From the NCBI GenBank assembly GCA_973895155.1, contig OZ316897.1:3938211-4002210 (forward strand): a DNA stretch of 64,000 nucleotides, in the 5' to 3' direction. The notes under the pieces are model-generated. The model saw only the letters and a program-made list of their open reading frames with translations, was not told the origin of the DNA and ran no database searches. Shown here piece after piece: positions 12,563 through 62,615 of this stretch (its first letter is position 1; each line of letters starts with the position of its first letter). Made by a program: the position numbers and the translations under genes. The DNA comes from Marsupella aquatica. Its lineage: Eukaryota > Plantae > Marchantiophyta.

Positions 12563-12758
12563 GACCATGAATCGAATTGTAAAACTATTCGAGCATGAGT
12601 CCCGCTGCAAGGAGTAGCTGCACATGAGTATAGTTCGAAATATTAAAATGAATTGAGCATGGGACAGTCCCGGCATCCCTCTCTCCATTTTTGGACATCA
12701 TAATCCTTGACTTCTGGCTTTCCATCATTGCTTCTGAAGTCCGCCATAATGGCAATCG

Positions 12759-12762
12759 AAAA
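12759..12762 (-). terminator. Putative Pol III terminator (TTTT) shared by the tRNA pair
   Basis: This is the first T4 run on the minus strand, 15 nt past tRNA-Leu(CAA). There is no T run between the two tRNAs. Confidence 0.55.
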
Positions 12763-12777
12763 GCATTTGACTTGGAT

Positions 12778-27800: not shown

Positions 27801-28713
27801 TACCTTGCAGAAGTGCATATCTCAGTCTACTACAGAAGTAGAGTATGTTGCAGCAGCAGAAGCTGCAAAGGAAGCAATTTGGTTGGATAAGTTGATCGCG
27901 GAGATGGGTTTAGAGCATGGAAAAATGACTCTAAACTGTGATAGTCAGAGTGCTCTTCACTTGGCTGCTAACCAGGTGATGGATAGCAGGGTGAAGCACA
28001 TTGATATCAGGTACCATTTTATCAGGCAAGCAGTGTCTGATAAAACTTTTGAGCTAGTCAAGATTGATGGAAAGCTCAATCCCGCTGATGTCTTTACCAA
28101 AGTGATTCCTTTGGAGAGTTTCTCAAGACACCGTGTTACTTTGCAGGTTTTGCAGTTGTAGTGCAAGTAGAGTTATTTAGCAATATGTGACTATTTGTAT
28201 ATGGATTACTCATTCCTGTTAGACTACGGCTTAGTTCTAGTTAACCCTTAGTTAACCCTTGTGGTTTTTAGGGGGAGACCTGGTTTGGTGATTGTCTAGA
28301 ACTTCCCGCTGAGGATTCCATATGGTAGCATTTAGTCCAGTCCCCAAGACAAGAGTCAAGGGGGAGTTTGTTAGATATTGCTCTAGTCTTGGGACTCTTG
28401 TGCTAACCACAGTTAGGCTAACTTGGGTTAGGACCTAGCTAAGGTTAGCGGTAGTGCTGTTGTGCATATAGCCAAGGCTGATGCCAGACCCTGGTGGAAC
28501 TTAGGCTCATTGTTACGGAGCTAGTTGAGAAATAGGGAGAGCTTGTGCTGTGGATGCTTGGTATGGCCGGTCGGCCTAGAGTGCAGTAAAGCTCTTGTGT
28601 ATTCCTGTGGACGTAGCCTCATGTGGAGGTGAACCACGTATCTCTTTGTGTCGACTATTGTGCGTTGGATAGCTTCATGGGCTTGCCGTTGCGAATGTCG
28701 TCTATGCTCAACA
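21871..28713 (+). mobile_element. Full-length Ty1/copia (Tork/Tnt1-like) nested in the gypsy RNase H
   Basis: TG...CA LTRs at 21871-22219 and 28369-28713 differ by 7 transitions and one 4-bp indel by eye. TSD CCAAA (21866-70, 28714-18), PBS TGGTATCAGAGC (22222-33) and PPT AAGGGGGAG (28358-66) are present. Confidence 0.97.
23887..28161 (+). pseudogene. Copia gag-pol in a single frame with two in-frame stops (TGA 24940-42, TAG 26626-28)
   Basis: KFEVEKYDG, CWNCGKPGHMKRDC, WILDSACTFH (PR), LWHFRLGH..CEHC, VHSDVWG, LRSDNGGEY and PQQNGVSER (IN), IYVDDMLI (RT), GYVDSDY and KHIDIRYHFIR (RH) all lie in one frame. Confidence 0.92.
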
Positions 28714-28718
28714 CCAAA

Positions 28719-30415
28719 GTGGTAATCCACACAAATAGCTCGTCGGCCGGGTACTTCAGTTCTAAGCCAAGGCTGAACCCCAAGGAAATGCGCTGGCAGA
28801 TGTTCTTGGCGGATTTCGATTTTGAAATCCGCCACGTTCCAGGGAAGACAAATACGGCAGCAGACGCGTTATCGCGTAAGGACCAACATCGTGTCAATGG
28901 GATCACGATGCTCGAATTCGAGTGGCCAAAGGTTCTGGCCGCGGCGTATGGGGATGACAGGTTAGCTAAGGATTGGCAAAGCAATGGGGGTAGCCGGGGC
29001 AAGGGAAGGCACGTATCATTGGGGTTGGATACGACGCATACTGTCCAGTTATGGCGATACAAGCAGAGGCGTGTGTAAATACCAGAGTCTCTAAGGTTAG
29101 AGGTTCTGCAAAAGTACCACGACTCGCCCTGGGGAGGGCACGGAGGACAAGCCGCTACGTATCACAACATGTCGCAAGATGTGTATTGGCCGGACATGAA
29201 GCAATCGGTCCTTCAACACGTGCAAAGTTGTTACTCGTGCCAAAAGAACCCAACGGTCTATAGGGCAAAAGGAGGACTGCTGCAACCCTTACCAGTAGCT
29301 GCGGCTCCATGGGAGTCTATCTCCATGGACTTCATTGTGGGATTACCTGAGTCCCACAACAGTAACTCCATCTTAACAATCGTGGATCGTTTTTCCAAGA
29401 TGGCGTATTTCTTGCCTACTATATGAAGATGGTTTCGGCCCGAGAGGTTGCCGGTCTAGTATTTGACAATGTCTTCCAACAGTGGGGATTGTCATTGCAT
29501 ATCTTGTCCGATCGCGATACCAAGTTCACGGGCCATTTCTGGAAGGCATTGTTCCGGTTATCCGGAACGGACCTGACCAAGGGATCAGCGTATCATCATG
29601 AGACAGATGGCCAAACATAACGGGTTGATGGTATTGTGGAGGACTACTTGCGTCACTTTGTGATAGCCAATCAAAAGGATTGGGCGAAGCATTTAACAAT
29701 GGTCGAGTTTAGGTATAACTCAACCAAGCATTCGGCGATGGGGTTTGCGCCGTTTGTGTTGGCCATAGGGAGGATGCCAAGGGCGCCCTCCTGGTTTATA
29801 AATCCGGAAGCTTGGCGGACAGAAAGCAAGGTTCCTTCGGCGGACGATTTTATTCGAGAGCGGCACCTAGTTGTGGAAGCGGCTACCAAGGGTATGACCC
29901 TTGTCCAAAGTCGGTACAAGGAGCAAGGGGATAAACATCGACGCCAGGTAAGCTTTGAAATTGGGGAGAGCGTTTGGTTGCAGTTGAGACCTGAGCAATA
30001 CCACGGGAACATAAGTAGGAAGCTGGCTCCCAGATATGCGGGGCCCTATTGCATTATACGATGGGCCCACAAGGATAATCCGGTTTCGGTGGTGTTGGAG
30101 ACACCCAAGGAAATGGGCGTGGGCAAAAGCTACCATGTTAGCCGGCTCAAGAAGTTTGTCAAAAACGATGATCCCAACCGGGATCAGGTCTTGCGTCCTG
30201 ACGCCATGCTGGTGGAGGACGCTAAGGAGTTTGAGGTGGAGGCAATTCTGGCCCACCGTTACAAATGCAAGTTGGGAAGGCAAATCTTAGAGTATTTGGT
30301 GAAGTGGGCTGGCTATGATCAGGCCGAGAGTACTTGGGAACCGGAAGAAAATTTGGGTAATGCCTCAGAGATCCTTGGAAGCTATCGTAAGCGAAGCGAC
30401 CTACCCCCATTGTGA
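28719..30415 (+). pseudogene. pol: Gypsy pol 3' part (RNase H end, integrase, chromodomain), disrupted
   Basis: Motifs GKTNTAADALSR, HDSPWGGH, VQSCYSCQ, PWESISMDFI, SDRDTKFT, KLAPRYAGPY and the chromodomain FEVEAILAHR...YLVKWAGYDQAESTWEPEENL. Confidence 0.92.
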
Positions 30416-50824: not shown

Positions 50825-52996
50825 TGACCACGCTCCCCTAGCGCAGCACGCACAGAAATCCACAACACCTAATATTTCTCAAGGATGTTGCATCCCTCTC
50901 CTTCGAAAAGAAGTGCAACGAAAAACCTGACGATTGATTCCTCGCCTCCCGTAGATATTTCCAAGACCCGCAAAAGACGAATCAACGGTACCCCTGATGA
51001 AGGACTCTCCTCCTCACTCTCTCCCGATGATTGCCCCTCCTCCCCGCCTCTGCAGACCAGTAAAACTCTTCAGAGAACAATCTTCTCAGCACGAGATAGC
51101 CTCCTCTCGGGCCCTCACCTCGGACAGTTGGCAGCAACAAGACGCTTCTCGTCGTCGTCGTCTTCTCCGCTTCTGCTTCCCATTACACTAGTCTGTTGGT
51201 AATCTTCTCAAACGCTCTGCCTTTCTACTAGAACTGTAGCTCCGTGGGAGTTCCCTCGTCTGCCGATTAAATTACACGGGGAGAACGGGTCCAGCGACTT
51301 CACCAGCCCGGCCTTTGGTGGTATTGGCCCATTGGCTCTCGAGTCCCATGACGTTCGCCCACCCGCTTGAATGCCTCCCCTCCGTCCGTTTGTGTCTGGC
51401 CCGCGGAGTCATGAGTCGCACTGTTCACCTCCGCGGCGCTAGTCCGTTCTGTCCCTCCGTTCTGTCCCTCCGTTCAGATGTCCTGCTCCGCTGGGTCCTT
51501 CGGTTTCCCACCGCCCGATGCCGCTTGCCCCGCGCGCTTTCACTGCCGTCCGTCCGTCCCTCTTGTCCCTTGCGGGTGACGATGCCCCCGTAGGCCCGTA
51601 CCCTCGCCCCACTCCTGCCTCCCTCGCGGTCTGATAGAACCTGAGCCCTCACCCCCAGAATTCGCTTTTCCCAGTCGCTCCCGTCTGACATCGGTGCCCA
51701 TGTTTTCTCCGTCCGTTCCATCCGCGACTCGAGGTGGCCACCTTACACCTCAAATCTCTCCCGGAAGCTCGATTCCCGTGGTCGGATTCTTCTGCTGTAC
51801 ACTGCCTTGGGTTTCATGGTACTGTAATGTACAGGGCCGTAAGTCTGTACGTATGGGCGTGCGGGAATGATCGTGTGTCAAGGAAATGTAAATCATACGG
51901 ACCGGGGACGACAAAATGCATGGGTATGGGGTGCCTGGGCCGATGCGGATGGAAGGGATTAGCGGGCAAGTGTAGTTTTTACTTTGTGCCACATCTGCCT
52001 TTTGCAACGTGGTCGCCTCCCAAGCCCCTCTTGCTTTACACTTTCAACGTGTCATCCTCTGCTGGAATTCGTCGTTCCTGGCCGTATTAAGCGCTTGCAC
52101 CCTGCATGGAATAATTCTTACTGATGACGATATGGTGCATAAATTAAGTAGGTGGTGATGGCATACTTTTTCCTTTCCAAGCTTTACAGTTTACTCCTGA
52201 GTAACGCTGTTGCCGTTCTGCTCGACTCTCACCGAGAAACTAGTGGGCCCATTTCTTTGTAAGGACCAAACAAAGCACAATAGAGTAACAGGAAAATAGC
52301 TCCACAGAGGACACACAAAACGGAACAAACACCAAAGACGCGGGGAGATAAATGCACTCCACAGTAAACAATGATAGGTGCAAAACCCCAACAATGGTGT
52401 CATTTAGTGTGGTTCGCTAATGGCACACTTCAAGTGTAATAACGACGTTTGCCAGTGGGACGTGAACTTATTTATTAGGGCGTCTCAAAGCTGGCCCGTA
52501 ACCAAAAGTTATGGGCCAGCCAAGCAGCCCATAACGACACTTGCGGGCATCACTTATGGGACCGGATAATTAGCCGGTCCCTTGGTTTGACCCGCCCCTT
52601 AAGGAGCTACTTACGATGCCTTACCCGCTCAAAGTAGGAGTTAAGTATCCCTTCCCTCTCGGACAGTACTTGGCCGTAAGGCGCTGAAATGTGCCACGAC
52701 AGTCCTGAACCCAGGTGCTCCTCATAAGTGTCCCGTCATTTCCCAGCAAAGCTATCGCCATAGTTTCTGTTGTTCAAATTTCAAATGCACCTCTTCCCCA
52801 CCAAAGCGATTATCCGGAGCTTCATTTAGCTTCAACGTCGGGCTCCATGGCGATGGTCAATGTAGCTCTGTCTCCAGAACATATAGGTGAGACTCATCCA
52901 GATATCAGAGAAATTGTTATTCGATTGTACGTGCAGACCGCTAGAGAAGGTGTAGAGAAATCGACAGAAGCTGCTCCTCCCAATTCGTGTACAACC

Positions 52997-54428
52997 ATGG
53001 CACAATCAGGCAGCCAAGGTCATGTGAGAGCAAGGAGTTCATTCCAACCTCCACGGGCTAACTCCAGCAATGCCCCCTGTATAGGTGATAAATTCAGGCT
53101 GAAGAATCATGACTACGAATGCATCGTTTCATACTTGGAAAAATTTCCAAGCAATTACAGGTGGAGGAAGGAAGACTCGAGTGGGTGGAAAGTATCAAAG
53201 CAAGACAACACTCTTCAAATCCATGCTTGCTGCAATGCAACATCATGGCTTTCCTAAGGAGATCACTGCACCGAATTTGACAAAGAGATTCTAGAGGTAT
53301 GTGAGGCGGTACAAAGAGGCAAGAGAGGTGAAAATGCAATCAGGTGGAGGGCTGAATGAAGACAAGTTGGAAGCAGGGATTACATTGGAGAGCAAACTAA
53401 ACCGAGAACTAAACCGATTGTGCCCACACTTTGAAAGAATGCATGCAATCTTTGGGGAGCGACCGAATGTGGCACCACCAGTGGAAGGGGACTGTGGAGT
53501 TGAGGATTCCGACCTTGTCTTTCCTGACACCAATGCTGAATCAGATTCTGAGTCAGCATTTGGTAATGAGAATGCGGGTGAGAATGATAATCCCAATGTT
53601 TACCATGTCCCTTCCAACACTACCATCGTTCTTGAAGGTACTGGTCATTTACCTTATTGATTGTTGTACTTCAATTTCTTCAATTACAGAACAACAGAAT
53701 GTTCATTTGCTCACATTTGTCATTTCTCTCTGTTGTAGACACACCAATGCCAACACCTGGGCAATCAATCCATAATGCTCCTCAGGTGAGGCCAACACCA
53801 GAGACTTGCAAATGTAAACTATGGCAATTCTTTCTGGACCGAATTAGAGAAAATGGCACAAATTGGTAAGCATGTACATAACTGCACATGTGCAGCATGT
53901 ACAGAGTCTTGCCCAGTTGAAGTTGGTGAAAATCGACCAATGCAGGGTCCACCATGTACTCCAACTGAGTTCAACACCCCAGCCAAGTCTGTTTCAGAGG
54001 CCATGCCTCCTCCAACAGGGAAGAAGCCTGCAAAAACACCACTGGCTAGACAGAAGGATTTGCACAACACTTCCAAGACAAACTTTGTTGCCATATATGC
54101 AGACATGAACAACATGAAGGCAGACTAGCGAAAGGAATTAATTCAAAGTCGAGATCGATGGAAGACCCAAGAGCTAGCAGATCGGAGAGAGGTCAGGGTG
54201 GACGCTGCATTGCAGGCTGCAGCACAGAAGAAACTTGATCATAAGCACCAGTTTGCTATTGAAGCACAAGCTGCCAAAAATGCACGAAAGAGACTTCGAT
54301 CAGACCAAGAGCATGCACAGGAGATGGCACGGCAAGCACAAAGAGCTGCTCTTTTGACTACTCTACTCGGTAGTAACAAGACTCCTGCCAAAATAAAGGA
54401 GTTACTGCCCCTGGTGAAAGAGGACTAG
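52997..54428 (+). pseudogene. Harbinger Myb/SANT-like DNA-binding accessory protein, disrupted
   Basis: Reads YECIVSYLE/NFQAITGGG...NLTKRF*RYVRRYKEA...SGGG...KLNRLCPHFERMHAIFGERPNVAPP, then an acidic linker and a coiled-coil C-terminus. Lesions are a frameshift near 53140 and TAGs at 53292 and 54126. A GT-AG intron lies at 53638-53738. Confidence 0.7.
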
Positions 54429-54753
54429 TTTTGGTTCCAAGCAATTTAGACTTCCATTCATGTTGCATGTGTAGTAGGTGCCAAACTGTACAAGCATGAG
54501 TGTAAAAGACCAAAATCCATATTATTAATAAAGGTGGTACATGTTGTTATACATTCGTGGTCGAATGTCGCCCTCAATTTTCACTGTCAAATGCCTTGTA
54601 AACTATGGAATCTCAGAATTGCGACATAGCGACATCGCGACATCGTAGATACTTGAAATCTTGGAATGATGATATCATGACATCGCGACATGATTCATCT
54701 GCGACATTTGTACTGACAAAAAGTGAATTGAGAAACCTCTCCTCAAATGGCAA

Positions 54754-57076
54754 CTATGCGGATAACTTATTCTTTTGCACTATGGGATTAGGCTGAGGTG
54801 GTGGTTCTCTCGTAATGGAATTACGAGACACAGCTTCCAAAATTGCTTCCCTCACATCAGTATGATGTGTTGAAAAAGGGAGAGACTTCAACTTAACTCC
54901 ATAACTAATCAACGGCAAATGTCGACGTACGAACATGTACTAAACCCGAGTGGCCTCCATAGCAGCTCCTATGACATCCCAATTTGTGAAACTAGTATAG
55001 TAAACTTTCGGAAATCTCTTCAAGTATGCATCTGTATCAACCAAGTCCAGCTCCATGCCATGAAACATTGCCATAGTTCTAGTGAAAAAATTGATGTAAC
55101 TTCTTATCTATGTCGTGGAGATGTCATCCCACTTCTGCTGACACACATGCCGAGGGGTGAAGGGCACAATGGTGTTCACAGGATCCCTTGGGAGATGCCC
55201 AACTGGATTTGTCCTATTCATCTGATTCAAGAAGTTCATCATGAACCTCAAAGAATATATACAGGCAAGTTCCCAAAGAAAGAGCAAAGGCGCTCATTGT
55301 CCTCCACTTGTAGGTCCCCGTACAAGACCATCACTGCTAGTGTGGGTCAGAAATGTTCATCTTCTTGCCAGAACTCATCAAATTGAGCTAACTCAATCTG
55401 AAAAGGTGCCAGTACTGGGAGGTTGAATATGAATTGACATTCACCTTTCTTCAACTTGTAAAACCTTCAGAACTCATTGATTGGGCTATTCATAGTCGAC
55501 ACCAGCGCACATAAATTTGCAAATCTCTTCAGTTGTTGTACTGGAGTCACCGATTCCACTCGAATGGTTGGTGTGAAGGTTGTTTGTGTAGCTTCATCCA
55601 CCATTTCCCTAAACTGCTTCCTCTGCATTGGGGGCTTAGCTGGAATTGAACTAAAATCAAATTTTAACAGAGCCACAGTATTGGGTTCTTGCCCAATGGG
55701 GACCTGTGTAACAGGGAGCTGCACAATTGGCTCCAACACAGGCTCCATCACATCCGTGTCAGTTGCAACAGGCAATGTGGGAGGACTATTTCCAATAGGT
55801 GAATAGTCAAACATAGGACTGAATCCCTCACTCAAATCCTCAGCTCCTTCCCTATGAGCATCGCTAATGATGGTCCTGGGCTGTGCAATGGAGTTTGAGC
55901 TTTTGAAGGAGGAAGTAAATCAAACAGCATATCCAAAATTTTCTCCCGTGGACAACTAAGAATGTACATGGCCTGTTGCACAATGTCGGTATTAATCCTA
56001 GCCTCACATGCCTCATTGGCACTCATTGGAGTCCCTCCCAGGCCACATGGAGAGGCATCTGGTATCTGTAAATCTCGGCCTTCGAAGTCATCAGTGTCTG
56101 CCTCTGCATCGTAGTGGCCTCCAATGCTCATATTGTCATTGTCCACATTCTGTTCAACGTCCATTGGGTGCAGACCATTGTCAGCCTCCACTTCAAGTCC
56201 AGCTACATCGCTGTCGGATTCTGCATGACTGTCGGGTTCTGCATCGCTCTCGTGTTCTGCATTGCTCTCAGGTTCTGCATCGCTCTCGGGTTCTGCATCG
56301 CTCTCGGGTTTTGCATCGCTCAGGAGTTCTGCATTGCTCTTGGGTTCTGCATCACTCTCGGGTTCTGAATCGCTGTCAGATTGTGATTGCCAATTGTCTG
56401 GCACCTGAATCCCGATGTGCTCTATTAACTGCTTCCTCACCCGTTTCTCAGAATCCAATAAGCAGTTCCCGTACCAATACAATTGTGCTAGGTAGTTTTG
56501 CAAGTATGTTGGTTTCCCCAAGGCCAGATGCTTCAGCTGATCAAAAATTACATTCCTAAGCAACAGAGCCCAATTTATGGTGCTCATCCCCTTCCAAGCT
56601 GCTATTATAGTATTTGCCAGGCTGACAGGTGCCATAGACAACTTCCTTGGATGGAAAATTGGGACTAGAAATTGCATCAGAAGGCGGCAGTCGTGGTCGA
56701 TGCATTGGTTGACCTTCCAACCACAACTCGTTTTCCTTCCCCCACCAAAATACGAGTCAGACAAGGTATTGTGTTTAGAGTAAAGGCCTTCACCTTCCCA
56801 AGGGCATTGAAAAGCATCAGCTACGAAGTGGAGACTCCATTCCTGTGGTTTGCCTCTAACACCGTCGGTCGCATGGGACCTCCTCGGCCTTGGAACTAAC
56901 ATTTCGTCAACGTAAGAGATAGATAGCACGCCCCAAGGAATGAACATCAATGTCGTCAATTTCATTTTCCCCAACATTCCATGCAACTTCTTCACATCCT
57001 GTAGCGACGTTGGGAGCTCCGCCAAAACCTTTTTAGGTACTGCAACGACGTTCGGCTCCTCATGCACAGTCACCAT
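54754..57076 (-). pseudogene. Additional Harbinger-borne gene of unknown function (TE-associated domain, acidic 6-aa repeat, C-terminal domain), disrupted
   Basis: ORF 55832-57076 (414 aa) continues by frameshift into 55467-55835. It then runs through isolated TGA/TAG stops and one more shift down to 54754 (manual translation). Confidence 0.6.
56214..56375. repeat. 18-bp coding minisatellite, 9 copies (SDAEPE-like)
   Basis: Variants of TCGGGTTCTGCATCGCTC occur 9 times. Confidence 0.9.
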
Positions 57077-57538
57077 TGCGGCTTAAAAAAAAGTCAATTC
57101 TCAATGTTGGGCAGCTGCGCATTGCGGTATGAAGGCATTTCAATACCACATTTGGCTGTGCGGAGGTTTAAGCAAAACGTGCCCAAAGTTCAAAGCAAGG
57201 TTTAGGGTATCGGGTACGTATGCGCGTTGGTGGGAAATATACCTTATGAAATAAACACTTGTCGTACAATACTGTTAATTGAGTTGGTATACCGCCACTC
57301 AATATTGAAAATGAGCCTCTCTGTATCACTGCACAGGCCAATATGAAAATGCAAATGTACGTGCCTAATAACAATGAAATAAAATGTGAGACAGTGGGGA
57401 AGGTGAAAAACAAATACCGGAATGGGTATTAGAAGAAACATTTCATAGAATTATCTTTGGTTCCTCCCACATCCATAATTATTAGTAGGAGGCTGCCACA
57501 ATTAATTTAAATACACTAGTTTTAGTGTTCTCAGCGAA

Positions 57539-59140
57539 TTAACGCATTGTATCTGATACTCGATGGAGGCATCCTCCTGGCTGTCTATGGAAATGTAATG
57601 CATGCGTCATGACAGTTGATTGCAATCCGAGTCTACGCCGTGCTGCAGCTGCACTACTGCGATTGTTCCGGTAATGAAGCAAGTTCGGTGCATCATTATC
57701 AGAATCATTTTGTTCCTCCACTTCTAACTCCCCATCTTCATCTGTCCACAAATCATTTCTGCTAATAACAAAATTGTGTAATTTTGCACACATTAGTATC
57801 CAACGTACGAGCCACACACAATCTTTGTTCTCCTTCAGTTGAATCTGCATTTCCTTCAACGAATGCCAACGTGACTTCAGTACCCCAATGCAATGCTCAT
57901 TTGTTACCCTGGCAGTTGCAACACACATGTTGAATTCCTCCTTCTCCTGGCTGCTCTCAGACCATTTGTAGGAGCAAACCAAATGCTCCATTATCTGGTA
58001 TCCGCTGTCTCCAAGCAAGTACTGAGTTCTTCCAAAAAGGTGTCCATCATTTTGTTTGCGGTAGAGTGCTGATCTTTTATAACAAGTGAGATCTGAACAA
58101 GATCCAGGCATACCTGCATGATGCAAGTAGAGTGCAATCAGTGATCATCACATGAAGGTCTTTTCACATCCAACTTTATGATATTGCGACATGGCAAAAT
58201 CATGTTATCGCGACATCGCGACATCATAGCGAAGAACATGCTTCATTATTATCCTTCTTGATAGTTTGGTAGTCAGACACGACGACATCACAAAAGAAAG
58301 GAGAAGGACATGCTTACCAGTGTACATGTATAGGATCTTGCGTCTGTGATCACAAACAACTTGGGCATTTAGCGAGTACCTTGACTTCCTGTCAAAATAA
58401 CATTCTCCACCAGTTTTGGGTCTTTGAGACAAAGGGATTAACGTTCCATCTATCAGCCCAACGCAGCCAGGAAATCCTCTTTTGATAAACTCGTCTGAAA
58501 TCCTTTGACGCTCTGCTCTCTTAGGCCATTTCAAGTATTCCTTCAGGGCACACTCTAAAGCGGTCATTGAGCGGGTTGTGAAATTGCAAAGTGTCCCATT
58601 ACTTACTCCCCATGTAGGAATGAGACGGGAAAGGCATGCACTATTACCATCATGACCTAGCCGATCAAGAGCCACTGCAAGCTGCCAAGCAACAAGTGCC
58701 TGTGGATTGTTTGATTCGCTTTGAAAAATGGGGTGCTCCTCAATGAGGTCAACAAGTGCATAGAACGATTCCCTGTCCATTCGAGTCATTTGCCGAAACT
58801 CACGAGGAAGCATACAATCAAAAAATTGGGTTACATATTCTTTTGACTTGTTGAAGAAGATTCTATCATTCAAAAATCTAGTGTTGTCCATGACAGCATA
58901 CAATTCAAACAACTCTTCAGGATTCCCCTCCAATTCTAACATGTCCCCACAATCATCAGAATCATCAGAAGAGTCCAGGTCTATATTTGAATCTGAATCA
59001 GTGAGCTGTACATTATCGCTGCTCATACAATCAGCACTTGAGTAAATTCCATCATCATCAGAGCTTTCAAGTGCAATGTTCAGCTTCAGTGTTTCCCTCA
59101 CAGCAGTGAGAGCCTTCTGACGTTCCGATATTCGAGGCAT
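57539..59140 (-). CDS. Harbinger/HARBI1-type DDE transposase, 465 aa, 2 exons (59140-58318, 58113-57539), apparently intact
   Basis: Motifs FRQMTRMDRESFYAL, QLAVALDRLG, FPGCVGLIDGTLI, YSLNAQVVCD, G|MPGSCSD, YLLGDSGY and FN...ARVTNEHCIGVLKSRW. A GT-AG intron at 58317-58114 keeps the frame. Confidence 0.93.
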
Positions 59141-59330
59141 GATGGCACTGAACAGAATTACAACATCATCAGGAACCAAAACAAGTGTGGAGACCACTCA
59201 CAATATTGCTAAAAGGGTTGTGCATCCATAATCTTCTTTGGTCAGAATTGTGCTCAAATAAAATCATCAGAAACCATGGCCATTGCCTATTGAAAGATTG
59301 GATTACAATACAGAACCAAAATTGTTTGGC

Positions 59331-59978
59331 TCACTCATCATCACTATCTAGATTATGGAATTTCAAAGTCCTCACTAAATCATCTAATACTTCTGTGATC
59401 TGCTTGGCTGTTTTTTTCCCCTTCTGTGATGACGTGCTGGCCTTCCTGGGGGAGACAGCAGATAGTCGGTGTGTAGGATAGTGAGGAGAAGGGGGAATAG
59501 ATTGGAGCACTGTGTCCACAAAGGACATGTGCAAGACCTTCACCGCATATTCATTTACAGATAGAGTGATTTCCACTCGATGCAATTTTTGGGTGACACC
59601 AAGGACAGTGCGTGTCTGCTCCAACTCACTTAACAGTGCAAGGTCATGTGGAGTGGAATCCAACATGGTGGAGGCTACTTCCCATATCTGTGGACACATA
59701 GGGGTAACTGGCGCATGTATTGCATCGCAAAGAACTACATGGAATCGAAAGGTAGGCTTTCCAGGGAGACTGTGGTTACATTTGGGCCCAAACTCGAGGG
59801 ACTTCAGGCACAGTTGCCCGGATGTGAACCTGTGAGGACACGCAGAATATACAAATTTCCTAGGATGGGGATTTGGGGCCTCAAAGTTCACTAGCCATGC
59901 CAGAGCAGGAGAGAAATTTCTACACTCTCCAGCTGATCTACTTTCATCCACTTCAGCGAGAGACGTCCACCCAACCAT
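59331..59978 (-). CDS. Putative RPA70 C-terminal-like zinc-ribbon OB-fold protein, 215 aa
   Basis: FVYSACP-x8-CLKSL-x5-CNH-x6-TFRFHVVLCD resembles the RPA1 DBD-C pattern F.Y.ACP..C.KK....C..C.....RY.L...I.D. The start context is ACCATGG, and a plausible GT-AG leader intron lies at 60110-59987. Confidence 0.6.
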   Translation of the reverse strand: MVGWTSLAEVDESRSAGECRNFSPALAWLVNFEAPNPHPRKFVYSACPHRFTSGQLCLKSLEFGPKCNHSLPGKPTFRFHVVLCDAIHAPVTPMCPQIWEVASTMLDSTPHDLALLSELEQTRTVLGVTQKLHRVEITLSVNEYAVKVLHMSFVDTVLQSIPPSPHYPTHRLSAVSPRKASTSSQKGKKTAKQITEVLDDLVRTLKFHNLDSDDE

Positions 59979-62615
59979 GGTCGCTTCTACAATTCATTCC
60001 GGGATGAGGCACTATGTCATACACAATATGTAGAACCTCGTGGCACTTTCATGAAACTAAATCACAAACTTGTCCATCCTAGATCATGGGTGAATGCTGA
60101 GAGTACGTACCTAGCTGAGTTTGCACTGATCGTTTGATGTTGAACTCGTCCCGGTACGCGATCTCGATTTCTCTACAAAACCACCACCAAAATTCAGGGA
60201 GCACAGTCACAGCATGCGAGGGAGAGTAATAATTACTTGATTATTCATGTTACGCACCAAAGAATTGAAGGTCTATCGCTATGGTGAACTTACATGATAC
60301 CTGAGGGCCTGGGGAGACCTTCATTCACGACCTTGTTGGGAGACTTCGTTTCTCGTAATGGATGACGGGGACAATTCTGAAGGTGTGGCTTTTGGTGCGT
60401 CATGTTCAAACTGTACTGCGACAAAAGAGGTGTACAGTATTGGCGCCCACGTTAAGGGACATGTGTTAAAGTTAAGTGTTAATGCTACTGCCCGGGGCCA
60501 ATACTTACGGGACCCGATTTGGGGCTCCCGTAATAGTTACGGCCAGACCCGTAACTACTTCATTACGGGTGGACGTTAACAAGCTACGGGCCAGCTTTGA
60601 GATGCCCTATTAGTTGGCTTTCTTATTAGTTGGCTTTCATGGGGTTTCACTTTATTGGATCTCTCCTGCTAGTGTAATTTTTTAAGGTTGTTTCTTTTTG
60701 TCCAGTGTGGCGAGTCATCACCTTCTGTAAACGAAAAGATGCTAGGTATACTCATATCACTTTCCTATTTTCTGACCATCCGATCTTTGTGGATTAAGTA
60801 TTGCCATTTGATTCTGGCTAACTGGGTCTGTGGTAGGTGAGAAATTGGGTAATGGAAGACAGAAATCCTAGCGAATTAGTGCCACTGAGAAAAAAGTTAT
60901 CTCCTGCCCTTGGGATATTTTTCCTGTAGTTTGACCCTTTTTTGGTTCTTTGGCAGACACTCTGCTATACATCTTCAGTCTTTTTTCTTGTACTGGGAAT
61001 GTTTATATCTTACAAGGGAGATAGAAGAGCACATCGCCCAGGAGCAAATAAGTGTCTCAATAAAACATTGAGAACTCCCCAAAAAGTATGGAGGATGTGC
61101 CAACATAGAAGGACCACATAGATCCAGAACGCACTAAAACCAAACGGTCACACAGATGAGAGCGAAGCCCAGGAACTGGTGGAGTCGCTGCTTAAGATTT
61201 TGATTTCTGATATTTTGTAGGAATTTCTAGAAGCAACCAGGGGAGAGGGAAAGACCTAGACCAGCCTACTTTTTAAATGCAAACTTTTGCCAAAGTCCTC
61301 CCTTCTAAAAAGTATTGGCCACTTTTGGTGGGAGTTAGCCAAGGCATTCTTCTTGGATTGGCCAGTTTGCACCTAGCTATAGACCACAATAGTTAGAATC
61401 TGGAGGTTATCCAAATTTAGGGAAGTCCAACTATCAGAAATATACATATCACAGAGCTAAAATACAAAAAAGCCAAATGGGGAGACAGAGTCCCAAAGGC
61501 AAAGCAACCCAGTAAAGGGAGGGAAAAGGAAAGGGCAAAGGCCCCAAAACGACCAAAGTACAACAAGCCAAGGAGTCCCCCACGACAACCAACTAATTAA
61601 CTAACCTATGAACAGCCCGATAAGGAATAAACTCAGCACCTTCTCCTTTACACAAGGTGACATTTCCTGGCAAAAAAGAAAAACCCTTAAAATCGCATTG
61701 CTCATAATAAATGAGTTTTTGAGGGACTTTTGCTTGAATTCTATTGTGGGGGATTCTCCTCTTCCATTTTCACTCCTCCATTCTGAGCTATTTTCTCAGA
61801 TTGAGGTTGTAGTTTTCCTCAGATTGAGGTTGTAAACCTGCAAAGGTCAACAAGTTCAAGAAGTTTGGGGTGTTGCTACAGCCTACTGAGTGTATCCACA
61901 TGGAGGGTAAGCATTTTATGAGAGCTCTTGGTGAGTGGAGGTTTAGGATCAATGCTTCCAATGAATGACCTGGAATATATGTTGACTAGCCTGACTGCCC
62001 AAACTTTGCTAAGACCCTATATTGGTGAGGGAGGAGACCCACTAAAGGGGGAGAAAAGAAGGGAGAAACCTGAAGCAGACAAACTAGCCAGAATAACCCA
62101 AGACACCCCACAACTACAAACTGAATCCCTAAGGAGGAGCAAACTGAAAAGGCTGGTAAAACTCCTGTAGTACGAGCAAACTTGCATGTGGGTGGCCAGT
62201 AGGTTTCTGGCTATGAACTTCACACATGACAGGAAAGTATTCACTCAGAATGTTGTGGAGAAACCCCTTGGTCGATCAGGCAGGGTTTATCACATACAAA
62301 GTAGAGAACCAAAGGCAAGAGCTGGAAACATTCAGGCCTCATGAGATCCTGCACTATGAAATGAGAAAAAACAAACATCTGCAGGTTCACACAAAGGGAC
62401 AAGAGAACATAGAGATTCTTGCAGGCTTCACAAGTAGTATTGGAGGAGAGTTTGAGGAACTTCTAAATCTATTTCTTGCGGACAGTTTTGGGATTATGAA
62501 AGGAGCCAATTTGAGGGCTGCATAAATGCAAGTTGGCGTTAACCACAATAGTAGTGTCTACATACCTCTGGACCCTAAAACCAACAGCCTGTTGGCCCTA
62601 AGAACAACAGTGAAC

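What the first reader, a model, noticed from the sequence alone, without database searches (positions are those of the whole stretch)
52477..60608. Four-gene PIF/Harbinger: transposase, Myb-like protein, RPA-like OB-fold and a large unknown ORF inside one TIR pair
Seen: one TIR/TSD-bounded 8.1-kb unit holds a plus-strand Myb-like gene converging on three tandem minus-strand genes (OB-fold-like, transposase, ~770-codon decayed ORF). I see no nested-element boundaries around the two extra genes. Established: canonical PIF/Harbingers encode only a DDE transposase and a Myb/SANT protein. Inference: this may be an undescribed Harbinger lineage with stably carried accessory genes, for example for ssDNA handling or anti-silencing. 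I do not know of this architecture being described, but cannot verify that.
Basis: partly seen in the sequence, partly recalled or inferred. Interest (0 to 1): 0.82.

Follow-up and report, generated by a model that had tools for sequence, protein, structure and literature searches.

The report
Decayed four-gene Pangu transposon, VANC-like cargo
This is a real but mutation-damaged 8.1-kb cut-and-paste transposon of a liverwort-type genome that carries two genes beyond the usual two: a small conserved cysteine/histidine protein, and a large protein whose fold matches only VANC21, the anti-silencing factor of Arabidopsis VANDAL transposons.

Summary
A 24-nt terminal inverted repeat (TIR; 1 mismatch) with ATT on both sides bounds 52477-60608. 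Removing the element plus one ATT restores a perfect 16-bp tandem repeat. The transposase is a DDE_Tnp_4 enzyme and looks intact, with one GT-AG intron.

The element belongs to the Pangu group of the PHIS (PIF/Harbinger-ISL2EU-Spy) superfamily, not to canonical PIF/Harbinger.

- **ORF2 ("Myb-like"):** conserved in relatives but broken here. Its Myb assignment is only a weak lead.
- **"RPA-like" ORF:** conserved in the same slot in the closest relative I could fetch (Calypogeia fissa, locus L004), under constraint equal to the transposase. I could not confirm its OB fold, because the AlphaFold2 model failed.
- **Large ORF:**
  - It is a full-length but decayed member of an unnamed family with 225 relatives.
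  - Two of these sit as the 3' extra ORF of Ty3/gypsy retrotransposons.
  - L004 has a very distant member in the same slot.
  - Two relatives with both transposase and ORF2 have neither extra gene.

The small gene therefore looks like a stable trait of this lineage. The VANC-like gene looks like exchangeable cargo shared with retrotransposons.

The scan found the same architecture before on other DNA of this genome (s1-778909). I read that note only after my own result.

The parts
52474..52476 (.). Left target-site duplication, ATT (TATTA if read as 5 bp)
   Evidence: The same triplet lies at 60609-60611, and the reconstructed empty site is a perfect 16-bp tandem repeat.
52477..52500 (+). Left terminal inverted repeat, starting AG
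   Evidence: 24 nt, 23/24 complementary to the right end, 0 matches expected by chance.
52709..54425 (+). ORF2, the Pangu second gene ('Myb-like' is only a lead). Broken here by a frameshift in an A-run near 53140, a TAG at 53292-53294 where L004 has Gln, and a stop at 54126-54128.
   Evidence: Homologous to uninterrupted or longer ORFs in L004, L005 and L009 (41-60% identity per piece). No Pfam hit. ESM Atlas gives weak leads (0.79-0.81) to Myb_DNA-bind_4/3.
54769..57076 (-). Large accessory gene ('gene C'). The open 414-codon N-terminal part is 55832-57076, holding the VANC21-fold domain and an acidic tandem-peptide region. The C-terminal part is decayed, with in-frame stops near 55467, 55350, 55108 and 54940 and at least 2 frame changes.
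57539..59140 (-). DDE_Tnp_4 transposase, apparently intact, 465 codons. Exon 1 is 58317-59140, the GT-AG intron 58113-58316, and exon 2 57539-58112 including the stop.
   Evidence: PF13359, 6.9e-6 and 6e-18 on the two exons; 56-63% identity to Calypogeia fissa proteins; alignments and splice sites.
59331..59978 (-). Small conserved accessory ORF of 215 codons, open ('RPA70C-like' by pattern only), with conserved Cys47, Cys57, Cys67 and His69.
   Evidence: 49-54% identical to an ORF in the same slot of L004, with the same start and C-terminus; pN 0.283, pS 0.658; third homolog in L010. No Pfam, PDB or Atlas hit. AF2 pLDDT 32.
60505..60569 (.). Right subterminal CCCGTAA/TTACGGG motifs (4 copies; 1 more at 52495-52501)
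   Evidence: the motif is found only within about 110 bp of the two ends of the 8.1-kb element.
60585..60608 (-). Right terminal inverted repeat
60609..60611 (.). Right target-site duplication, ATT

Best explanation
This is a dead copy of a liverwort Pangu-group (PHIS superfamily) cut-and-paste transposon.

Shown:
- It has exact ends and ATT flanks.
- The DDE transposase is intact and contains one intron.
- The second gene (ORF2), normally conserved, is broken here.
- A small Cys/His protein gene lies between the right end and the transposase. The closest relative keeps it in the same place, under the same constraint as the transposase.
- A full-length but decayed gene lies downstream of the transposase. 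Its family otherwise sits behind pol in Ty3/gypsy retrotransposons. Its N-domain has the fold of the DNA-binding region of VANC21.

Inferred:
- The transposase and ORF2 carry out excision and insertion at (T)ATT(A).
- The VANC-fold protein binds DNA or chromatin to counter silencing, as VANC does. It has moved between transposon classes as a module.
- The small protein is an accessory DNA-handling factor, possibly binding single-stranded DNA.

This copy can no longer supply ORF2 or the VANC-like protein.
For: - **Ends:**
- **Transposase:**
- **Pangu criteria** (ANT duplication, TIR starting AG or GG, second ORF without a known motif): PMC4482050.
- **Relative L004:** homologous TIR, ATT flanks, and the order small ORF, transposase, gene-C-like ORF, then ORF2 on the opposite strand. 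A gene-C N-domain HMM built without the window hits the L004 ORF at E 4.7e-8, and hhalign gives E 4e-5.
- **Constraint on the small ORF:** pN 0.283 against pS 0.658, compared with transposase pN 0.27-0.28.
- **Gene C family:** 225 relatives. P0005 and P0001 lie directly behind RVT/RNaseH/rve genes.
- **VANC parallels:** VANC and MAIN (a plant mobile domain, PMD, protein) share a fold (PMC13547354). VANC proteins have variable tandem-peptide regions and bind dense short motifs (PMC5735166). Gene C has an acidic tandem-peptide region. Its distant relatives in L010 and L004 are flanked by dense 8-mer arrays: 19 found against 0.36 expected, and 7 against 0.61.
Against: - Only one related element (L004) shows all four genes. 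L005 and L009 carry only transposase plus ORF2, and L006-L008 only a transposase.
- The window's gene C sits in a 99%-supported clade with retrotransposon-borne genes, while L004's gene is a very long outside branch. The two slot occupants may therefore be independent captures.
- Gene C is badly decayed here, and there are no motif arrays in the window's non-coding DNA.
- The RPA/OB reading has no tool support at all.
- Synonymous sites are saturated, so dN/dS values are rough.
Confidence: 0.55

Rival explanations
1. The large ORF is passive cargo. A Pangu element captured it once from a Ty3/gypsy retrotransposon by recombination or transduplication. It has no role in this element's life cycle and is simply decaying. 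The gene-C-like ORF in L004 is an unrelated, independent event.
For: - The closest relatives with known context are retrotransposon-borne.
- The tree places the window gene inside that clade and L004's gene far outside.
- The gene has at least 4 stops and at least 2 frame changes here.
- L005 and L009 lack it.
Against: - The gene is complete from its own start to its C-terminus and collinear with an 808-aa relative.
- It has no pol remnant and no flanking repeats.
- It lies on the transposase strand, in the same slot as in L004.
- Both Tnp-bearing loci with the small ORF have a gene-C-like ORF, and none of the five without it do. L010, which has no Pangu transposase, carries both genes too.
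- Its first 414 codons are still open.
Confidence: 0.3
2. The small ORF is not an RPA-type OB-fold protein. It is a lineage-specific small zinc-binding protein of unknown fold, for example a regulator or a transposase partner.
For: - No hit in Pfam, PDB sequences, the ESM Atlas or the word search.
- The AF2 model is unusable, at pLDDT 32.
- The conserved ligands are C-x9-C-x9-C-x-H, not the RPA70 spacing as I recall it.
Against: - The residue pattern and the low-confidence strand/helix order resemble RPA70 DNA-binding domain C. This is my own reading, not a test.
- Two earlier notes of this scan (s1-763480, s1-766309) report an RPA70C-like fold for such genes in other copies. These are leads only.
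Confidence: 0.35
3. The unit is a composite: other elements inserted into a two-gene Pangu transposon and brought the extra genes with them.
For: In L010, a distant gene-C-like gene sits in a 3.5-kb unit bounded by inverted motif arrays that interrupts another gene C copy.
Against: - There are no TIRs, direct repeats or duplications around either extra gene in the window.
- The small ORF occupies the identical position in L004.
- There is no gag/pol inside the element.
Confidence: 0.07

Closest known systems
Pangu group of the PHIS superfamily (Han et al. 2015, PMC4482050)
   Same: DDE_Tnp_4-type transposase. A 3-bp ANT duplication (ATT here and in L004). The TIR starts with AG. The second ORF has no recognisable domain. 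Relatives occur in oomycetes and fungi as well as plants.
   Different: Described Pangu elements average about 3.5 kb with two ORFs. This one is 8.1 kb with four genes. I did not test placement in the reference Pangu clade.
Canonical PIF/Harbinger
   Same: The same transposase superfamily, and a two-gene core with a convergent second gene.
   Different: The flanks are ATT, not TWA. ORF2 matches no Myb/SANT Pfam family. There are two extra genes.
VANC21 of Arabidopsis VANDAL21 (MULE) and the PMD fold (MAIN/MAIL1)
   Different: There is no sequence-level similarity to DUF1985 or PMD. The host is a liverwort, whereas VANC is dicot-specific and PMD is described mainly from angiosperms. The carriers are a Pangu transposon and Ty3/gypsy elements, not MULEs. 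No function was tested.
Extra ORFs of plant Ty3/gypsy retrotransposons (Steinbauerova et al. 2011, cited in PMC7156037)
   Same: Relatives P0005 and P0001 lie directly downstream of pol, on the same strand, in Ty3/gypsy elements.
   Different: Here the gene lies in a DNA transposon, with no gag, pol or LTR.
RPA70-like genes of plant Helitrons
   Same: Possibly a transposon-borne protein that binds single-stranded DNA through a zinc-containing OB domain.
   Different: The fold is not confirmed here. The transposon moves by cut-and-paste, not rolling circle. The protein is a single small domain, not a multi-domain RPA70.

Membership tests
PHIS superfamily (DDE_Tnp_4 transposase) | Transposase matches the DDE_Tnp_4 catalytic domain | tested here: met
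   PF13359 hits both exons (6.9e-6 and 6e-18) and together they cover profile positions 1-158. The GLIDGT, GDSGY and NEH motifs are visible.
Pangu group | 3-bp target-site duplication of form ANT | tested here: met
   ATT flanks both ends in the window and in L004. A 5-bp TATTA reading cannot be excluded from these two insertions.
Pangu group | TIR of 11-40 bp starting AG or GG | tested here: met
   The TIR is 24 nt and starts AGGG.
Pangu group | Transposase falls in the Pangu clade of the DDE-domain tree | not tested
Canonical PIF/Harbinger | TWA (TAA/TTA) target-site duplication | tested here: not met
   The three bases flanking the TIR are ATT on both sides.
Canonical PIF/Harbinger | Second gene encodes a Myb/SANT-like DNA-binding protein | tested here: inconclusive
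   No Pfam hit for the window exons or for the intact L004/L005 ORFs. ESM Atlas gives only 0.79-0.81 leads to Myb_DNA-bind_4/3 and MADF.
RPA70 DNA-binding domain C / Rep_fac-A_C | Sequence match to the family | tested here: not met
   No Pfam hit even at E up to 10. No PDB sequence hit with a single sequence or with 2- and 3-sequence profiles.
RPA70 DNA-binding domain C / Rep_fac-A_C | OB barrel with an inserted zinc ribbon | tested here: inconclusive
   The AF2 model built from 2 sequences has pLDDT 32. Four conserved Cys/His residues are present.
VANC / PMD-fold transposon accessory proteins | Fold of the VANC21 DNA-binding region | tested here: met
VANC / PMD-fold transposon accessory proteins | Sequence membership in DUF1985 or PMD (PF10536) | tested here: not met
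   None of the 56 family members hits these families at E up to 1. VANC21 is not among the 60 best-scoring chains listed at E up to 10 in the profile search of PDB sequences (93 matched).
VANC / PMD-fold transposon accessory proteins | Binds dense short motifs in its own element and removes silencing marks | not testable with these tools
   There are motif arrays next to the distant relatives in L010 and L004 but none in the window element.

The most novel reading that the evidence does not exclude
Liverwort transposons of two unrelated classes, Ty3/gypsy retrotransposons and Pangu DNA transposons, exchange a VANC/PMD-fold DNA-binding module that counters silencing. Such modules would then be far older and more widespread than the dicot VANC system. 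One Pangu lineage has in addition recruited a small, possibly RPA-like, DNA-binding protein as a stable third gene.
Probability: 0.3. Interest if true: 0.8.

Novelty: new variant of a known kind. Interest (0 to 1): 0.62.

Why it matters
PHIS transposons are described as two-gene elements. Sequence-specific anti-silencing by VANC is known only from Arabidopsis-type MULEs.

A VANC-fold gene family shared between retrotransposons and a DNA transposon in liverworts would show that such accessory modules are ancient and move between transposon classes. It would also give a tractable non-angiosperm system for studying how transposons fight silencing.

A conserved small DNA-handling protein in a cut-and-paste element would be a new kind of PHIS cofactor.

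Tried and rejected
- **Word search with the 414-aa ORF:** it found nothing, probably because the acidic repeats swamped the word list. The full HMMER search then found 225 relatives.
- **Word search, ESM Atlas, PDB sequences and Pfam for the small ORF:** all blank.
- **AF2 of the small ORF** with a 2-sequence alignment failed at pLDDT 32. I did not use the model for a fold search.
- **Metagenome scans:** the scan with the small ORF found no relative. The scan with a closer alignment only re-found the L001 contig.
- **Nested-element hypothesis for gene C:** no flanking inverted or direct repeats above shuffled controls, and no gag/pol inside the element.
- **Sequence link of gene C to PMD, DUF1985 or VANC21:** none. 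One family member weakly hits Transposase_32 (E 0.014), which I did not pursue.
- **Element ends in L005-L009:** no TIR of this type found.
- **Spliced models:** I searched the transposase and ORF2 exon by exon, by reference.
Full report
**1. The element is real and its ends are exact**

A 24-nt inverted repeat lies at 52477-52500 and 60585-60608, with 23 of 24 bases complementary. Zero such matches are expected by chance. No second copy or fragment occurs elsewhere in the 64-kb window.

Both ends are flanked by ATT. Removing the element plus one ATT leaves a perfect tandem pair of a 16-bp unit spanning the junction. That is good evidence for the exact boundaries. The flanks can also be read as a 5-bp TATTA duplication with termini one base further in. 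The two insertions I have (window and L004) cannot separate the two readings.

A heptamer, CCCGTAA or its complement, occurs five times in the element. All copies lie within about 110 bp of the ends, as expected for subterminal binding sites.

**2. Transposase and classification**

Two minus-strand ORFs match Pfam DDE_Tnp_4. The first matches the start of the profile and the second the rest. They are joined by a canonical GT-AG intron at 58113-58316. The junction reads YTG|MPGS, exactly as in relatives. The gene runs from the Met at 59140 to the stop at 57539, is 465 codons long and has no internal stop.

The nearest proteins are from the liverworts Calypogeia fissa (56-63% identity) and Riccia. 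More distant ones come from Phytophthora and Mucoromycota.

Han et al. 2015 (PMC4482050) define the Pangu group of the PHIS superfamily by three features:
- ANT duplications;
- TIRs starting AG or GG;
- a second ORF without a known motif.

All three fit here, whereas the TWA duplication of canonical PIF/Harbinger does not. I did not build the transposase tree, because no reference sequences were available.

**3.

The plus-strand pieces between 52709 and 54425 are homologous to ORFs convergent with the transposase in L004, L005 (C. fissa) and L009 (Riccia sorocarpa).

No Pfam family matches the window pieces or the longer ORFs of the relatives. The ESM Atlas gives only weak leads (0.79-0.81) to Myb_DNA-bind_4/3 and MADF.

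Compared with L004, the window copy has three lesions:
- a frameshift in an A-run near 53140;
- a TAG at 53292-53294 where L004 has Gln;
- a stop at 54126-54128.

ORF2 is therefore a pseudogene here.

**4. The small ORF (59331-59978, minus strand)**

It is open for 215 codons. In the C. fissa element L004 a homolog sits in the same place, between the TIR and the transposase on the same strand.
- The two share the start (MVxW) and the C-terminal motif, with 49-54% identity.
- L004 has one frame break near its end.
- Between the two elements pN is 0.283 and pS 0.658, a rough dN/dS of 0.23. The transposase has pN 0.27-0.28 and ORF2 0.26-0.36, with synonymous sites saturated.

The gene has therefore been kept under protein-level constraint as strong as that on the transposase.

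A third, 29%-identical homolog lies in L010. Four residues are invariant across the three: Cys47, Cys57, Cys67 and His69.

- there are no hits in the word search, ESM Atlas, Pfam (even at E up to 10) or PDB sequences with 1-, 2- or 3-sequence queries;
- AlphaFold2 with two sequences gave pLDDT 32.

The resemblance to RPA70 domain C is my reading of the residue pattern. It is also reported by earlier notes of this scan (s1-763480, s1-766309). I treat those as leads only.

**5. The large ORF ("gene C")**

*It belongs to a real family.* The 414-codon ORF (55832-57076) has 225 relatives in the 1.84-billion-protein library, 77 of them below 1e-10. They cover residues of about 10-270, and full-length members have 600-800 residues. 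None has a Pfam domain or a name.

*It is a full-length gene.* The intact 808-aa relative P0002 aligns collinearly to the window from 57052 down to 54769. Its C-terminal third carries in-frame stops near 55467, 55350, 55108 and 54940 and at least two frame changes.

*Its relatives sit in retrotransposons.*
- P0005 lies on a contig with a 123-nt terminal overlap, that is, a repeat assembled as a circle. P0005 follows RVT_1/RNaseH/integrase there and precedes a Ty3 capsid gene.
- P0001 likewise follows RVT_1 and rve.

The family is thus a 3' extra ORF of Ty3/gypsy retrotransposons. Inside the window element there is no gag or pol. No repeat pair flanks gene C.

*Its fold matches only VANC21.* I ran AlphaFold2 on P0002 with a 56-sequence alignment.
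- Residues 10-230 have pLDDT above 95. The rest is mostly disordered apart from long helices.

*It shows VANC-like traits.* An acidic tandem-peptide region follows the domain. VANC proteins have similar variable tandem-peptide regions.

**6. Are the extra genes stable parts of the lineage?**

I fetched six loci around the closest transposase relatives.

| Locus | Species | Content |
|---|---|---|
| L004 | C. fissa | Complete 12.3-kb element with all four gene types |
| L005 | C. fissa | Transposase plus ORF2 only |
| L009 | R. sorocarpa | Transposase plus ORF2 only |
| L006, L007 | C. fissa | Transposase only |
| L008 | R. fluitans | Transposase only |

L004 has the closest transposase (58-64% identity). 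It is bounded by a homologous TIR and ATT flanks. Its order is small ORF, transposase, a 484-codon open frame (a 467-codon ORF from its GTG start), then ORF2 on the opposite strand.
- A gene C N-domain HMM built without the window sequence hits that open frame at E 4.7e-8.
- hhalign gives E 4e-5.
- hhalign gives 94% probability for its 813-aa relative in L010.

In a tree of N-domains, the window gene sits in a 99%-supported clade with the retrotransposon-borne P0001 and P0005. L004's gene is a very long branch outside everything. The careful tree search did not finish, so this is the quick tree.

My reading is as follows. The small ORF is a stable trait of this sub-lineage. The slot downstream of the transposase holds VANC-fold genes that either evolve extremely fast or, more likely, are exchanged with retrotransposons.

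**7. State of this copy**

About nine disabling lesions fall in ORF2 and in the 3' part of gene C. None falls in the 3.3 kb made up of the transposase, the small ORF and the first 414 codons of gene C. Under an even spread about 4.8 would be expected there, giving P of about 0.01. This is a post-hoc estimate of mine. The copy is non-autonomous as it stands.

**8. Relation to earlier notes of this scan**

After reaching the VANC21 result I searched the notes. One follow-up report (s1-778909, other DNA of the same genome) describes a decayed four-gene 9.5-kb Pangu element whose fourth gene matches only VANC21 and whose family is usually found in liverwort Gypsy elements. That agrees with my result and hints at further copies. 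I did not see that DNA, so it is not independent support.

**9. Limits**

- I had no access to other copies in this genome.
- Only one relative shows the full architecture.
- The function of every accessory protein is inferred.
- Spliced genes were searched exon by exon.
- Nothing here looked human, and no step needed referral.

Noticed in passing
L010:11996-12493 and 15513-15774 (C. fissa GCA_965154635.1, contig CBCUJL010000001.1): There are 19 copies of AGCGCTTA (0.36 expected). All lie in the non-coding DNA on both sides of an 813-codon ORF (12654-15095, minus strand) that is a distant gene-C/VANC-fold relative. The layout resembles VANC target-motif arrays. The whole 3.5-kb unit interrupts another gene C copy (P0009, 9872-10798, with its C-terminal part at 15956-17077).
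   Followed up: partly
L004:12178-17266: Seven copies of GGCTTAAG (0.61 expected) are confined to the stretch between the transposase and ORF2 that holds the gene-C-like ORF. GGGGCTTA and related motifs cluster on both sides of that ORF.
   Followed up: partly
L001 (JGI Ga0066793_10001426), whole contig: The 10.85-kb metagenome contig has a 123-nt exact terminal overlap. It is a Ty3/gypsy retrotransposon assembled as a circle, with the order gag, pol, gene C homolog (708 aa), then about 1.7 kb of non-coding DNA.
   Followed up: partly
L010:616-1398: A third homolog of the small Cys/His ORF (260 codons, 29% identity) lies 8.5 kb upstream of a gene C copy on the same strand. No Pangu transposase was detected between them. 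The left end of that unit lies outside the fetched locus.
   Followed up: partly
window 56203-56385: An 18-nt tandem repeat inside gene C encodes an acidic hexapeptide array (SDAEPE-like). It caused a spurious weak Pfam hit to Trypan_PARP.
   Followed up: yes
window 60609-60640: The element inserted into a 2 x 16-bp tandem repeat of host DNA. The repeat becomes perfect once the element and one ATT are removed.
   Followed up: yes
window 20700-21700 and 28700-30060: tblastn matches to Ty3/gypsy reverse transcriptase and integrase show a separate LTR retrotransposon region elsewhere in the window. No gene C homolog is detected there.
   Followed up: no
L005:8875-9913: A 1-kb segment bounded by a 33-nt inverted repeat (94% complementary) lies immediately upstream of the transposase start. 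It may be a small nested element sitting where the small ORF lies in L004.
   Followed up: no
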